A stretch of 64,000 nucleotides of DNA from Stylophora pistillata (lineage: Eukaryota). Of this stretch, positions 49,300 to 58,602 are shown one piece after another (within the stretch, counting starts at the first letter, position 1; each line of letters begins with the position of its first letter). The DNA is taken from assembly GCF_002571385.2 (NCBI RefSeq), contig NW_019217970.1, positions 281,027-345,026 of the forward strand. The letters run 5' to 3'. The notes beneath the pieces were generated by a model. It saw nothing but the letters and a program-made list of their open reading frames with translations, had not been told where the DNA came from and did not search any database. Both the position numbers and the translations under genes were made by a program.

Positions 49300-52200
49300 C
49301 TAAACGTTTTCGGAGCAGAAAAGTTCCATCTCTTCTGAATGTCTCCCTCCGTCAGTGGCTTCCCCATTTTGAGATTTTACAGCCATTAACCAGTAGAGCT
49401 GTACACTGCCGATGAGTATCAAACCAACTCCGACCAGTGTCCCACAAATAAGAAGAATTATTACCCATAAAGGGAAGCTGGAACCGTTGGTTGATTTACC
49501 TACGGGATCTGCAGACCAGATAAAGAATGTGTTACTGGACAAACGCTTCAAAGAGAGTGTTGTCGAATGAATACATCAATGCTCCAATCCAGACCAGTTT
49601 GATGAACTATGTACTCAGTACATTTTGTACCACAACCATTGTAAACTATATTTCGTTTAATGATAAAAATTAAAGCAGGTTTAACAGAAAAATTAAAGAA
49701 ACAAAAACCAATCTCCAGTTACGTTTCAAGTCCACAAAAACTCCTCGAACCGAGACCTACACACCAAAGTCATATGATGTAACTACGTGATGTGCCGTAA
49801 TGCGTAACGCAACGCTAAATATCTGTAACAACCATGTCAGTGTGACAAACTGTTCCATGCGTTCAGTTGGTAAAAAAGAGCGAAATACAGTCAACTGCGT
49901 GACATCAGCGGCAAAACATAAACGAGGGGGCTCTGAGTACGGTCGCGTGGAGAACGCGAATCAACCCAAGCCTCCCACGGTCTTCACTCCTGCGCTTCTA
50001 TCGCGCTTTGTTTTACTAAATAAATGCCTGGAACAGGCTAGATAAGCTGAGAGAGAAGCATAACTCCAGCCGCCTAATGCTCCACTCTTTTTGCATTAGT
50101 GAATTCGTACAAGCCTCTGTAAAGATATCCCTTTACACATTTACATGAATGTCGTCATCAATTTTTTTGCTATTGGTAAGTTGGGGACAAACAACGCGAA
50201 AACAAAAACAAGTATTAACCCTTTATCTCTCATGAGTGACTGACTTCTTATTTCTCCTTACAGTATCACCATCGAAACAAATGTAAAGGTCACGAGAATA
50301 AAGGAAATGATCCAACCTCGTTCCCAGGGCCTTTTCCCTTTGGTTGGAAATGATCGCCAATTTCAAAAGCTCGAGATCACTACACCAACTCTCCTAGTCA
50401 GTACCATTGAGAACGTAAATAGAACAATGTGGAGAATATGAGTATTTTAAAAAATAATAATAAATAAACAAAAAGAGCAACGACAACAGACAAGATTACC
50501 TTCAAATACGTTAGAGGATTGGGGTTGAAGAGTTTTGCGAAGCATGACGGGACCGAGGGTGATGCGATGTTCTTCTTCGTCCCCAGCGCTCCTCTCGCGC
50601 CGAAGGTCTGATGGCTGACATCCTTTGTTGCACCGTGAATTTCCTTCCTTGTGACAGACGATGACATAACAGTGAAGATAAACCACAGTGTAGTTTGCAA
50701 TCCAACGAAATGGCACAAGCTGAAAACGCTGCGTGTCTGTCAAAGTGTGGGTGTAGTCGGTCCCATTATCTGTGGGGCAACTGGAAAGGACAACAACAAT
50801 ATATTTTAGGGGATTGACATCATAGACCTCGAATGGTTTGCTTTCATTCACTTATTCTTTTAAATGAGTTTAGTCCGTCAAGCGAGCGAAAAGAAAGATG
50901 AAAATAATGCAGCCTGATACCTTTCGCGAAAAAATGTTCTGCTAAAAGTTTGGAGAATTAAGGGGGGGCATAAGTTTCCGTTCACCATCACTTCGCTTAC
51001 CAATTAAAATCAACATAAAAGAAAAAAAATTATGAATCCGCTTCTAAGATTACAAGCACTGTTTACAGTGAGACTCCACTGATTGGCTTGATTGTGTTAC
51101 GTTTAAACGGATCAACTCCTCGCGAAACTCCAAATTACCCATCTCTCCGTTACCGCTAGTCCAATGTTTGAAGACGCACTTTCCGTACTGATACCCTCAT
51201 AGCCCCCCTGTATGATTATATCAGAATAGACAATTTTTTACTGCAATCCTAGCTTTCAAAATGTGGACCAGATGGTTTTGAACGTAAAGTACTACAAAAG
51301 CTCTGAGTTCGAACGAATAATCATATGGAAAGAACAAGAAATTGGCTGATGATCAAGAAAGATGATGCGTATTTGAGGCTTTTAATAAGTCTATTTTAGA
51401 TGATGTTTCACTTTCGTCCAGTTAACAAAATACTCACCCGTTTTCTATAAACTTATATCGTACGCTGTGTGACGGGTCCATAGTAGGTGTGGCCACGCAC
51501 AGGTCAGCACGGAGGATGAGGTCTGGGTCCGAGGTTTCCAATTTTGCTTGACAGTATAGTTGACCGAATGGGTCGATGGTCACCGGGTATTCCGATACAT
51601 CATACGGTTTCAAGTACTCGGCACTCTGATACAAACCCATCTCAAATGAGAAGTTACCATACCCCTCTAAAAACGATAAAGGGGAATAACCTACTAAGTT
51701 CTACATTGACCTTCTTTGCTTTGCTTTACTGACATTTTGCCTTTAAAAAGTGCGCACGTTAAACTCTTAAATTGATGATTAAGTGAGAGTGTGTGATCCT
51801 CTGGCGTGATCAAAAAAGTGTGTTAGTGATATGATGATCCCAACGGTAAAGTACTACTCTTCAAACATCTGTTCACTAATCTTAAGAGAAACTTTGTCCG
51901 TTTGTTTTCAAAACTTAACTGTTACAGTAGATTTTGCTAAGACAGGTATAACTCTGTATCACACATTCTATTCTCGACTTTATCGTTGGGCACTTTGGCT
52001 CACAAATACAAACAAATTTAGTTTGAATGTCTGCGTAGCTTCGCACCTACCCCTCCCCTAAACCAACATTTTATTCACCCTCACTTGTTACAGGGGACTG
52101 TTGTTAGTTTGGGGGAGGGGTGGGTGTGCAGCTGCTCAGATATTGGATTTGTAGCAAAATTTACCTTCAAAAAAGGTGATCTTTTTTCTTGGTTGAAAAC

Positions 52201-58200: not shown

Positions 58201-58602
58201 AGTCCTTAATAAAGCGATTCAAGGAGTTTTTTCCAGTTCTGTTGCATGTTTCTAGGAGTTTAAATAAGGTGAAATTTGGATTTCGCGTGGTTTAAGGGCT
58301 GATAATTTTTCCCACACAATTAACAAAAACATGTGTGCTGAAGCTTTCTTGGTTTCAGTATTTTTACTGCCATACATTTATAGCTTCTGTGTAGCAATCG
58401 ACTTAAGGGCAATTCATCATTTTGCCAATTCCTGTTTCATCATTGTCTAACGGAATAAGTTTGTAAAGTTAGCGTGACTTCGTGTCGTCAATTTTGCAAT
58501 CATCCCCTACTTACCCGTGACAGGCGGTTTCTCAAGGAGTAAAAATCCCATCACACAAAGAAGAACGAAAGAATGAAGCCCTCCTTGACAAGAACCTCTC
58601 AT
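49300..58602 (-). CDS. Gene C: type I membrane protein with an NCAM-like ectodomain (3 Ig, 2 FN3) fused to a zona pellucida (ZP) module, furin site, TM and short tail, ~887 aa
   Basis: Exons: 58515-58602 (signal peptide MRGSCQGGLHSFVLLCVMGFLLL); 56513-56794, 55485-55778 and 54564-54848 (Ig); 54086-54376 and 53125-53454 (FN3); 52165-52539 (ZP-N, VNCTSSYMQV...SCG...PLDACGT...FPFSCTY); 51438-51666 plus 50500-50780 (ZP-C, GNFSFEMGLY...CVATP...FIENGCP...VYLHCYVIVC...RCNKGC, then RRER and HRITLGPVML); 49300-49508 (TM LWVIILLICGTLVGVGLILIGSV, tail ending SENV*). The 2664 nt are in frame and all introns are GT-AG. Confidence 0.9.

What the first reader, a model, noticed from the sequence alone, without database searches (positions are those of the whole stretch)
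49300..58602. NCAM-type adhesion ectodomain fused to a polymerising ZP module (3 Ig-2 FN3-ZP-furin-TM)
Seen: ten GT-AG exons splice in frame into an 887-aa protein whose Ig and FN3 exons are paralogous to those of neighbouring gene B. Where B ends in a GPI-signal exon, C continues through a phase-1 junction into a complete ZP module (4 Cys in ZP-N, the ZP-C Cys set). After it come an RRER furin-type site, an external-hydrophobic-patch-like HRITLGPVML, a TM helix and a short tail. Established: ZP-module proteins such as uromodulin, tectorins and egg-coat ZPs are cleaved at such sites and polymerise into extracellular filaments. Inference: this protein could be shed and assembled into filaments displaying NCAM-like adhesion heads, a matrix-bound partner for the cell-bound GPI paralogs (in mucus, mesoglea, egg coat or skeleton interface). 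I do not know this architecture from bilaterian NCAMs.
Basis: partly seen in the sequence, partly recalled or inferred. Interest (0 to 1): 0.85.

Follow-up and report, generated by a model that had tools for sequence, protein, structure and literature searches.

The report
Coral IgCAM–ZP fusion membrane protein
This is a real, expressed coral gene in which three Ig and two fibronectin-III adhesion domains are fused to a uromodulin-like filament-forming (ZP) module; it is already in the public annotation under misleading names, is conserved in stony corals and sea anemones, and has no tested function.

Summary
Ten GT-AG exons on the minus strand (58602..49300) join in frame into 887 aa. Per-exon Pfam gives Ig x3, FN3 x2, ZP-N and ZP-C (two exons). 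Then come an RRER site, a TLGP hydrophobic-patch strand, a TM helix and a short tail.

RNA-seq shows every junction from Ig3 to the last exon. The disputed 53125/52539 junction has 95 stranded raw reads and contigs from three other runs. A single 2.7-kb contig runs from Ig2 to the 3' UTR. It is one gene.

The protein is letter-for-letter XP_022793175.1 / A0A2B4S6C7 of Stylophora pistillata ("neural cell adhesion molecule 2-like isoform X1"), so the model is already annotated. Collinear orthologues exist in Pocillopora, Oculina, Actinia, Actinostola and Nematostella. [quoted passage not shown] Nothing was seen outside Hexacorallia.

The ZP-C exons are closest to uromodulin and GP2. The cleavage site and hydrophobic patch align to uromodulin's, and the interdomain linker and patch are the best-conserved segments. 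Shedding and polymerisation are therefore plausible but untested.

"NCAM-type" is too specific: the head is a generic IgSF-CAM head. Moderate interest; a new member of a known kind.

The parts
58515..58602 (-). Exon 1: start codon and signal peptide (aa 1-29), donor phase 1
   Evidence: The same N-terminus is found in P0206, and in spliced transcript assemblies of about 3 kb that encode 887 aa.
56513..56794 (-). Exon 2: Ig domain 1 (aa 30-123), phase 1-1
   Evidence: Pfam I-set 4.4e-8. C51, W61 and C109 are invariant in 10 orthologues.
55485..55778 (-). Exon 3: Ig domain 2 (aa 124-221), phase 1-1
   Evidence: Pfam Ig_3 1.9e-11. The loose end at 54849 matches the reverse complement of this exon's end as read by eye. 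The X3 contig runs 293 nt beyond E4, which is about this exon's length.
54564..54848 (-). Exon 4: Ig domain 3 (aa 222-316), phase 1-1
   Evidence: Pfam Ig_3 1.3e-7. The E4/E5 joint is seen in 63 raw reads and 3 contig runs.
54086..54376 (-). Exon 5: FN3 domain 1 (aa 317-413), phase 1-1
   Evidence: Pfam fn3 1.8e-11. The E5/E6 joint is seen in 57 raw reads and 3 contig runs.
53125..53454 (-). Exon 6: FN3 domain 2 plus a Gly/Pro spacer (aa 414-523); the donor at 53125 is the junction into the ZP module
   Evidence: Pfam fn3 6.9e-13. The joint 53125/52539 is seen in 95 stranded raw reads and 3 contig runs.
52165..52539 (-). Exon 7: ZP-N (4 Cys: 542, 570, 589, 625) and the interdomain linker (aa 524-648), phase 1-1
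   Evidence: Pfam ZP-N 3.6e-11. It is single-copy in the genome; the next ZP-N is 34% identical. The linker is 70% conserved across orthologues.
51438..51666 (-). Exon 8: first half of ZP-C (aa 649-724). Reading through its donor (GG|gtga) gives the 725-aa short isoform.
   Evidence: Pfam ZP-C 1.2e-14. The best solved match is a chain labelled uromodulin, from the ZPD egg-coat filament entry 28yj, at 9e-6; GP2 follows. P0205 is identical to the model over its whole length.
50500..50780 (-). Exon 9: second half of ZP-C (C726, C762, C767, C775, C779), cleavage site and hydrophobic patch (aa 725-818)
   Evidence: Pfam ZP-C 5.7e-7. It aligns to human uromodulin 546-617 at 4e-6.
50591..50602 (-). 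RRER (aa 785-788): consensus furin-type cleavage site six residues after the last ZP-C Cys
   Evidence: An R-x-x-R motif sits at this column in all 8 sequences. It aligns to uromodulin's RFRS site.
50537..50569 (-). HRITLGPVMLR (aa 796-806): external hydrophobic patch candidate
   Evidence: TLGP is invariant. It aligns to uromodulin's VLNLGPIT. It is predicted as beta-strand 795-805. It is 70% conserved while the flanks are 22-38%.
49300..49508 (-). Exon 10: stalk, TM helix, cytoplasmic tail ending EEMELFCSENV, stop codon
   Evidence: The E9/E10 joint is seen in 53 raw reads and in contigs of X3 and X14; X2 shows it offset by 2 nt.
49378..49473 (-). Transmembrane helix (aa about 831-862)
   Evidence: A hydrophobic run, predicted as helix 832-863. 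Its position is conserved in orthologues.
   Evidence: X3 contig record 11 has 339 nt beyond 49250, and depth is high in 49250-49449.

Best explanation
Shown: window 58602..49300 (minus strand) is one expressed Stylophora pistillata gene, XP_022793175.1. It encodes a type-I membrane glycoprotein precursor. In order it has a signal peptide, three I-set Ig domains, two FN3 domains, a short Gly/Pro spacer and a complete uromodulin-type ZP module (ZP-N, conserved linker, 6-Cys ZP-C). These are followed by an RRER furin-type site, an external hydrophobic patch (TLGP strand), a stalk, a TM helix and a 25-aa tail.

Inferred mechanism, by analogy with uromodulin, GP2 and egg-coat ZP proteins:
1. The precursor travels to the plasma membrane with the patch strand blocking the ZP module.
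2. A furin-like or membrane serine protease cuts at RRER and releases the patch.
3. The freed ZP modules polymerise head-to-tail through the linker into extracellular filaments.
4. The Ig3-FN3x2 arms project from those filaments as adhesive or ligand-binding heads.

The gene arose in a tandem cluster of IgCAM paralogues, by joining a ZP module through phase-1 exons. It has been kept in that cluster since the ancestor of stony corals and sea anemones.
For: One gene:
- All modelled joints E4 to E10 appear with CT..AC ends (GT..AG on the minus strand). 53125/52539 has 95 raw reads, and first mates lie almost only on +.
- One 2683-nt contig runs from the 3' UTR through E4 and 293 nt further.
- About 3-kb transcript contigs encode 887-aa proteins.
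- The model is identical to P0206 with 0 differences.

Architecture: per-exon and whole-protein Pfam agree.

Conservation:
- Collinear orthologues run from 87% identity (Pocillopora) to 40-41% (sea anemones).
- Several intron positions match those in Nematostella.
- The Nematostella gene is flanked on both sides by Ig/FN3 genes.

Polymerising type:
- The best solved relatives of the ZP-C exons are uromodulin, GP2, a ZPD egg-coat filament and ZP2. TGFBR3 reaches only 0.043.
- RRER and TLGP align to uromodulin's cleavage site and hydrophobic patch.
- R-x-x-R and TLGP are kept in all orthologues.
- The linker (0.70) and the patch (0.70) are the most conserved segments, while stalk, TM and tail are 0.22-0.30. 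That is the pattern expected if everything after the cut except the patch is a disposable propeptide.

Matrix association: the likely Nematostella orthologue, NvIgCamZP, carries quantification values in the decellularised-mesoglea proteomics table (PMC12549020 supplement).
Against: - No cleavage, shedding or filament has been observed for this protein or any orthologue.
- RRER is a minimal R-x-x-R site, not the R-x-K/R-R optimum. One sea anemone has RTSR.
- An EEMEL motif in the tail is conserved from corals to Nematostella, which hints that the membrane-bound form or the stub has a role.
- Bergheim et al. class the Nematostella protein as an adhesome receptor, not a matrix component.
- The protein is not among the 60 S. 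pistillata skeletal proteins of PMC7115838. The ZP protein listed there is a different gene, XP_022806326.
- The whole-protein structure model is only moderately confident: mean pLDDT 61, with the ZP module at about 70-85.
- The equation NV2.21903 = P0010 rests on the name and on an adjacent NCAM-like gene, not on sequence.
Confidence: 0.6

Rival explanations
1. It is a non-polymerising cell-surface receptor or co-receptor. The protein stays in the membrane, like endoglin or betaglycan. Its ZP module serves for dimerisation or ligand capture, and the Ig/FN3 arm works as an ordinary CAM. The RRER site is unused or gives only regulated ectodomain shedding.
For: - It has a TM anchor and a tail with a conserved EEMEL motif.
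- The Nematostella matrisome paper classes it as 'Adhesome / receptor protein'.
- The Ig/FN3 head is closest to signalling CAMs such as Robo, DCC, neurofascin and RPTPs.
Against: - The ZP-C exons match uromodulin and GP2 (4e-6 to 9e-6), not TGFBR3 (0.043). No endoglin match appears.
- The cleavage site and the TLGP patch are kept in all orthologues.
- Stalk, TM and tail are the least conserved parts.
Confidence: 0.25
2. It is a tethered apical-matrix anchor. The protein, cleaved or not, links the apical cell surface or cilia to an overlying matrix such as glycocalyx, mucus, egg envelope or the calicoblast-skeleton interface. This would resemble DYF-7, NompA or Dumpy in nematodes and flies, rather than forming free filaments that display adhesion heads.
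For: - ZP proteins with varied N-terminal domains commonly play this role in invertebrates (own knowledge).
- In the Nematostella single-cell table, the values read in passages of the supplement suggest broad low-level expression, highest in stem/germ-line clusters. The column identities were not checked.
- Coral skeletal proteomes contain proteins auto-named NCAM-like or titin-like, but their identity with this gene is untested.
Against: There are no localisation data. The protein is absent from the S. pistillata skeletal proteome list that was checked. This reading overlaps with the main explanation in every sequence feature, so sequence alone cannot separate the two.
Confidence: 0.12
3. It is an annotation or assembly chimera: the Ig/FN3 exons and the ZP exons belong to two adjacent genes.
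For: A 585-bp intron separates two domain classes that are usually found in different proteins. RefSeq also lists short isoforms that end inside ZP-C.
Against: - 95 stranded raw reads and contigs from three further runs of different studies cross 53125/52539.
- Single contigs span from Ig2 to the 3' UTR.
- Collinear full-length orthologues exist in at least 8 other taxa, including independent transcript assemblies.
Confidence: 0.01

Closest known systems
Uromodulin (UMOD) and GP2, polymerising ZP-module proteins of vertebrates
   Same: - ZP-N with 4 Cys and ZP-C with the 6-Cys pattern C5, C6, C7-x4-Ca-x7-Cb-x3-C8.
- A basic cleavage site a few residues after C8, then an LGP-containing hydrophobic patch, then a membrane anchor.
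- They are the best solved sequence and fold matches for the ZP part.
   Different: - The N-terminal passenger is 3 Ig + 2 FN3, not EGF/D8C.
- The anchor is a TM helix with a cytoplasmic tail, not GPI.
- Sequence identity is only about 21-25%.
- Polymerisation has not been shown.
NvIgCamZP (NV2.21903) / XP_032241001.2 'titin isoform X1' of Nematostella vectensis, and the RefSeq 'NCAM1/2-like' proteins of Pocillopora, Oculina and Actinia
   Same: - The same family: collinear Ig-Ig-Ig-FN3-FN3-ZP-site-patch-TM proteins, 40-87% identical.
- The same gene neighbourhood of IgCAM paralogues.
- Several shared intron positions.
   Different: None in kind. These are orthologues. None has been studied experimentally, and their database names hide the ZP module.
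NCAM1/NCAM2 and other bilaterian IgSF CAMs (Robo, DCC, DSCAM, contactin, neurofascin)
   Same: I-set Ig domains followed by FN3 domains, one domain per phase-1 exon. They are extracellular and glycosylated.
   Different: - It has 3 Ig domains, not 5.
- NCAM is not the closest match.
- A ZP module lies between FN3-2 and the membrane anchor. No ZP-bearing bilaterian IgCAM turned up in the searches, which are word- and length-limited.
Coral skeletal 'ZP domain-containing protein' (A. millepora G8HTB6; S. pistillata XP_022806326)
   Same: It is an anthozoan TM-anchored ZP protein with a basic cleavage site between ZP and TM (PMC4890752).
   Different: It is a different gene without the Ig/FN3 head, and it has been found in skeleton proteomes. 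The protein studied here was not found there.
Betaglycan (TGFBR3) and endoglin
   Same: They are type-I membrane proteins with a membrane-proximal ZP module and a short cytoplasmic tail.
   Different: They do not polymerise. The match is weak (TGFBR3 ZP-C at 0.043). Here the cleavage site and patch are conserved.

Membership tests
ZP-module proteins (Pfam ZP-N PF23344 + ZP-C PF00100) | ZP-N domain with four conserved Cys | tested here: met
   PF23344 scores 3.6e-11 on exon 7. C542, C570, C589 and C625 are invariant in 10 orthologues.
ZP-module proteins (Pfam ZP-N PF23344 + ZP-C PF00100) | ZP-C domain with a conserved Cys set | tested here: met
   PF00100 scores 1.2e-27 on P0206, which is identical to the model, and 1.2e-14 and 5.7e-7 on exons 8 and 9. 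C705, C726, C762, C767, C775 and C779 are invariant.
Polymerising ZP precursors (uromodulin / GP2 / egg-coat type) | Consensus basic cleavage site just after ZP-C | tested here: met
   RRER is at 785-788. R-x-x-R is found at that column in all 8 sequences. It aligns to uromodulin's RFRS.
Polymerising ZP precursors (uromodulin / GP2 / egg-coat type) | External hydrophobic patch strand after the cleavage site | tested here: met
   TLGP is invariant. It aligns to uromodulin's VLNLGPIT. It is predicted as strand 795-805.
Polymerising ZP precursors (uromodulin / GP2 / egg-coat type) | Conserved interdomain linker / internal hydrophobic patch | tested here: inconclusive
   The linker 629-651 is the most conserved segment, at 0.70. 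Its role in an interface was not shown. The homotrimer job gave no answer.
Polymerising ZP precursors (uromodulin / GP2 / egg-coat type) | C-terminal membrane anchor (TM or GPI) | tested here: met
   A hydrophobic run at 831-862 is predicted as helix 832-863.
Polymerising ZP precursors (uromodulin / GP2 / egg-coat type) | Actual proteolytic release and assembly into filaments | not testable with these tools
   This needs expression, cleavage assays and EM.
NCAM (NCAM1/NCAM2) | Five Ig domains followed by two FN3 domains | tested here: not met
   There are three Ig exons and two FN3 exons.
NCAM (NCAM1/NCAM2) | NCAM as the closest bilaterian relative | tested here: not met
   The best full-length bilaterian hits are DSCAM, NrCAM, contactin and CDON at 22-28% identity. 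The Ig2 exon matches Robo2, neurofascin, DCC and DSCAM (1e-22 to 1e-25) ahead of NCAM2 (3e-13) and NCAM1 (2e-11). The FN3-2 exon matches titin best.
NCAM (NCAM1/NCAM2) | FN3-2 followed directly by TM/cytoplasmic domain or GPI signal | tested here: not met
   A 270-aa ZP module follows FN3-2.
Non-polymerising ZP receptors (endoglin, betaglycan) | Closest ZP relatives are endoglin or TGFBR3 | tested here: not met
   TGFBR3 scores only 0.043 and endoglin is absent, while uromodulin scores 4e-6.

The most novel reading that the evidence does not exclude
The shed IgCAM-ZP ectodomain polymerises into extracellular filaments that carry a regular array of Ig3-FN3x2 heads. These heads bind the membrane- or GPI-anchored IgCAM paralogues encoded next door. 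On this reading, one ancient tandem gene cluster would encode both the cell-bound and the matrix-bound halves of a hexacorallian cell-matrix adhesion system.
Probability: 0.1. Interest if true: 0.7.

Novelty: new member of a known kind. Interest (0 to 1): 0.4.

Why it matters
ZP modules are the metazoan device for turning secreted proteins into filaments, and the N-terminal passenger decides what the filament does. A filament decorated with IgSF-CAM heads would be a direct molecular bridge between cell-cell adhesion machinery and extracellular matrix in an early-branching animal group.

The family is single-copy and well expressed. It has been conserved since the common ancestor of stony corals and sea anemones. 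It is also present in Nematostella, which is genetically tractable, so the idea can be tested.

Practically, the public names ("titin", "twitchin-like", "NCAM2-like") hide the ZP module. They can mislead proteomic and transcriptomic interpretation in coral biomineralisation and matrisome studies.

Tried and rejected
- Scan notes: the search of earlier findings returned nothing for this place.
- ZP-N exon against the PDB: no phmmer hit at 0.1. ZP-N membership rests on Pfam.
- ESM Atlas by features: only generic Ig/FN3 clusters at 0.81-0.84, none with ZP. These are leads only.
- Homotrimer prediction of residues 531-788: "no answer" (score 0.16, mark 0.32). This is evidence neither way.
- Whole-protein Foldseek search: TM-scores are low because the model is a flexible multi-domain chain. 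Only the ranking is informative: IgSF CAMs for the head, and uromodulin and ZPD for the ZP part.
- Literature: no paper holds the RefSeq, GenBank or UniProt accessions or the name "NvIgCamZP" in its main text. The S. pistillata skeletal proteome paper lists another ZP protein, not this one. The Desmophyllum skeletal preprint mentions NCAM-like and titin-like proteins, but no link to this gene could be made.
- The look-up of encoding contigs for the Oculina isoform: not on record.
- Gene B's GPI exon: only a candidate was found.
- Two-gene reading: rejected.
- Rejected isoform: the 870-aa database variants are not an isoform. They are 5'-truncated contigs that start at Met18.
- Joined model: the joined translation was never typed or sent to a search tool. 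Database searches used single exons by reference. From then on they used the database protein P0206, which is identical to the model. The joined sequence was built only inside scripts from window.fa, to check frame and length and to compare it with proteins already fetched.
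Full report
**Observation**

Six-frame open segments on the minus strand between 49.3 and 58.6 kb hold a row of domain-sized pieces. I picked the splice sites that keep the frames. This gave ten exons: 58602-58515, 56794-56513, 55778-55485, 54848-54564, 54376-54086, 53454-53125, 52539-52165, 51666-51438, 50780-50500 and 49508-49300. 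Every intron is GT..AG. All junctions are phase 1 except E8/E9, which is phase 2. The sum is 2664 nt, or 887 codons plus a stop.

Pfam run on each exon by reference gives:
- Ig (I-set/Ig_3) for E2-E4
- fn3 for E5 and E6
- ZP-N for E7 (3.6e-11)
- ZP-C for E8 and E9 (1.2e-14 and 5.7e-7), matching profile positions 2-74 and 76-133
- no family for E10, which is the stalk, TM helix and tail

**One gene or two**

PolyA RNA-seq runs of this species and of "coral metagenome" samples hold 0.37-0.42 of the sampled words of window:51400-54400. The exons make up 0.41 of that stretch.

I laid three contig runs from different studies and one stranded raw-read run on window:49250-55249. This was 6000 letters. 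The table gives the joints seen, all with CT..AC ends, which is GT..AG on the minus strand.

| Joint | Raw reads |
|---|---|
| 49508/50500 | 53 |
| 50780/51438 | 58 |
| 51666/52165 | 67 |
| 52539/53125 (listed as 52536/53122, cut +3) | 95 |
| 53454/54086 | 26 + 31 |
| 54376/54564 | 63 |

- The contig runs show the same joints. For 49508/50500, X2's contig places it 2 nt off, at 49506/50498. For E5/E6 the contigs show the variant form 53452/54085 with a G between.
- The two forms of the E5/E6 joint differ only by a synonymous SNP at 53453.
- First mates lie almost only on the + strand, so the RNA comes from the minus strand.
- One 2683-nt contig (X3, record 11) runs from 339 nt of 3' UTR through E10 to E4 and then 293 nt further, which is about the length of E3.
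- The loose end at 54849 matches the reverse complement of the end of E3, as read by eye.
- Introns 5 and 6 have essentially zero depth.

They are supported by about 3-kb transcript contigs in the protein collection that encode 887-aa or Met18-887 products.

**Identity**

A full HMMER scan with the ZP-N exon found mostly fragments, plus an 878-aa protein with the ZP-N at the same position. Pfam shows this protein to be Ig-FN3-ZP. It is Nematostella XP_032241001.2, "titin isoform X1".

Searches seeded with it and with a coral transcript found the family members below. All carry Ig, fn3, ZP-N and ZP-C.

| Species or source | Protein(s) | Database name |
|---|---|---|
| Stylophora pistillata | P0206 | NCAM2-like isoform X1 |
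| Pocillopora verrucosa, P. meandrina | P0219, P0220 | NCAM1-like (P0219); unnamed protein product (P0220) |
| Oculina patagonica | P0204, P0115 | hypothetical protein (P0204); NCAM2-like isoform X2 (P0115) |
| Actinia tenebrosa | P0203, P0112 | NCAM2-like isoforms X1 and X2 |
| Actinostola sp. | P0111 | hypothetical protein |
| Logan transcript clusters | P0113, P0114, P0199, P0240 | unnamed |

P0206 (XP_022793175.1 / PFX24082.1 / UniProt A0A2B4S6C7) is 887 aa and differs from my model at 0 positions. So the window is S. pistillata, and the gene model is already public. Only the name hides the ZP module.

The gene is single-copy. The next best ZP-N in the genome is 34% identical.

No Ig-FN3-ZP protein from outside Hexacorallia appeared. 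These searches are limited by shared words and by length, so this is not proof of absence. Other cnidarian ZP proteins with FN3 or Ig next to the ZP module do exist. Examples are TSP1-FN3-ZP, NIDO-VWD-FN3-FN3-ZP and the Nematostella "WAP, Ig-like and ZP" proteins.

**Evolutionary context**

In the window, gene C lies tail-to-tail with gene B. B is on the + strand, with Ig exons at 34439-34702, 35866-36084 and 42298-42513 and FN3 exons at 43079-43312 and 44557-44821. Gene A lies further left (20290-22574). The exons match C's in the same order at 25-38% identity. B's FN3-2 also ends in phase 1, at 44821.

In Nematostella the orthologue is flanked on both sides by Ig/FN3 genes. Several intron positions coincide with those of the coral gene, including the FN3-2/ZP-N boundary.

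The supplement of Bergheim et al. [quoted passage not shown] It is classed as adhesome and Cnidaria-specific, sits next to NV2.21902 "NCAM-1-like", and carries quantification values in the mesoglea proteomics table. By name and neighbourhood this is very probably the same gene, but I could not compare sequences. The fusion is thus old, stable and already catalogued, though unstudied.

**The ZP module and likely mechanism**

An alignment of eight sequences shows the following conserved features:
- four ZP-N Cys
- six ZP-C Cys in the pattern C..GC..LHC-x4-C-x7-C-x3-C
- a basic R-x-x-R site 5-7 residues after the last Cys (RRER here; RRKR, RRTR, RRAR, RRRR and RTSR elsewhere)
- an invariant TLGP strand eight residues further on
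- a variable stalk and a hydrophobic TM segment
- a tail with an EEMEL motif

Against the PDB, exon 8 is closest to a chain labelled uromodulin in entry 28yj, the ZPD egg-coat filament (9e-6), followed by GP2 and ZP2. Exon 9 is closest to human uromodulin (4e-6) and GP2, while TGFBR3 reaches only 0.043. In the exon 9 alignment, RRER falls on uromodulin's RFRS cleavage site and ITLGPV on its external hydrophobic patch LNLGPI.

An AlphaFold2 model made from a ten-sequence alignment is only moderately confident (mean pLDDT 61). The ZP module is better, at about 70-85. The model puts a beta-strand at 795-805 and a helix at 832-863.

Foldseek places the head among Robo2, contactin-2, RPTP sigma/delta and NCAM2. 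It places the tail part with the uromodulin polymerisation region, a ZPD egg-coat filament and the uromodulin filament core.

Conservation by segment is telling. The interdomain linker and the patch are both 0.70, the highest values, ahead of FN3-2 at 0.68. The post-site spacer is 0.38, the stalk 0.22, the TM 0.26 and the tail 0.30. This is the pattern of a precursor whose C-terminal part is a disposable propeptide, except for the strand that blocks polymerisation.

I therefore rate [quoted passage not shown] as the most likely mechanism. Every step after biosynthesis is inference. A homotrimer prediction gave no answer.

**What it is not**

"NCAM-type" is not supported as membership. The protein has three Ig domains, not five. 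NCAM is not the closest bilaterian relative. A ZP module sits where NCAM has its anchor. "IgSF-CAM-like head" is the accurate term.

The idea that the filaments are ligands for the neighbouring GPI paralogues is untested. Even B's GPI exon is only a candidate (acceptor 45919), and it lies beyond an assembly gap that I left untouched.

The protein is not in the S. pistillata skeletal proteome list that I could read.

**Verdict**

The gene is real, single and expressed, and its ZP module looks polymerisation-competent.

The architecture is neither unannotated nor unique to this genome. It is a conserved hexacorallian family that databases name titin, twitchin or NCAM-like, and that one paper's supplement names IgCamZP. 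Among ZP-module precursors it is a new, uncharacterised member with an unusual passenger domain. Interest is moderate.

The joined translation was never sent to a search tool. Searches were done exon by exon by reference, or with the identical database protein P0206. N-runs were not filled.

Noticed in passing
window 51425-51446 (E8 donor) and intron 8, 50781-51437: Reading through the E8 donor (GG|gtgagt) gives Gly then TGA, a 725-aa product cut in mid ZP-C. This is RefSeq 'twitchin-like isoform X2', P0205. The same truncated end is predicted in Oculina, Actinia and Nematostella (..FIE[ND]G / ..FIDKG). Intron 8 has a few percent of exon depth, and contigs cross the E9 acceptor. It could be a conserved retained-intron isoform or just pre-mRNA.
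   Followed up: partly
window 50250-50449 (intron 9): This is a dispersed repeat. Summed contig depth is very high in X2 and X14 but only about 2 in raw reads. There are many loose ends at 50311-50313 with differing continuations, and a skipped repeat at 50449-50474.
   Followed up: no
window 52418 (exon 7, ZP-N): Raw reads of run X24 are 43 A and 43 G out of 86, with no read carrying the reference C. Other runs' contigs carry G or A. The site therefore has three alleles across samples, which suggests strong population or cryptic-lineage variation in this species.
   Followed up: no
window 53453: A synonymous SNP in the split Cys414 codon (TGT/TGC) makes the aligner report a second, false E5/E6 joint (53452/54085 with a G between).
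   Followed up: yes
window 34439-44821 and 45919-45995 (+ strand), gap 45085-45370: Gene B has the same Ig-Ig-Ig-FN3-FN3 exon order as C and ends FN3-2 in phase 1 at 44821. A candidate last exon (strong polypyrimidine acceptor at 45919) would add ..SSQSRLVSRAFLSIFLGGIYLFL*, which is GPI-signal-like. It is unverified, and an assembly gap lies between.
   Followed up: partly
window 20290-22613 (+ strand): Gene A is a third IgCAM paralogue, with Ig and FN3 exons matching C's E2, E4 and E5 at 28-38% identity. The window therefore holds a three-gene IgCAM cluster.
   Followed up: no
window 48686-48754: A (CT)n microsatellite lies between the 3' ends of the convergent genes B and C, about 160 nt beyond the minimum 3' UTR end of C (48911).
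   Followed up: no
window 52112-52142 (intron 7 side of E7): Loose ends at 52142 (11 raw reads plus one X2 contig) continue into unrelated sequence, and a few first mates lie on the minus strand. This may be a minor antisense or repeat-derived transcript.
   Followed up: no
P0116 (Acropora millepora XP_044166549.1): This 632-aa 'NCAM2-like' model is closest to gene C's Ig exons (47-56%). It has a duplicated Ig3-like segment and no ZP module. It is probably a truncated or mis-joined model of the Acropora orthologue, or else a lineage-specific paralogue.
   Followed up: partly
aa 875-887 of the model (window 49303-49341) and orthologues: The cytoplasmic tail ends in a conserved EEMEL-x-x-x-ENV motif in corals (DEMELHETVSL in Nematostella), although the tail as a whole is poorly conserved. 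It may be a sorting or PDZ-type signal.
   Followed up: no
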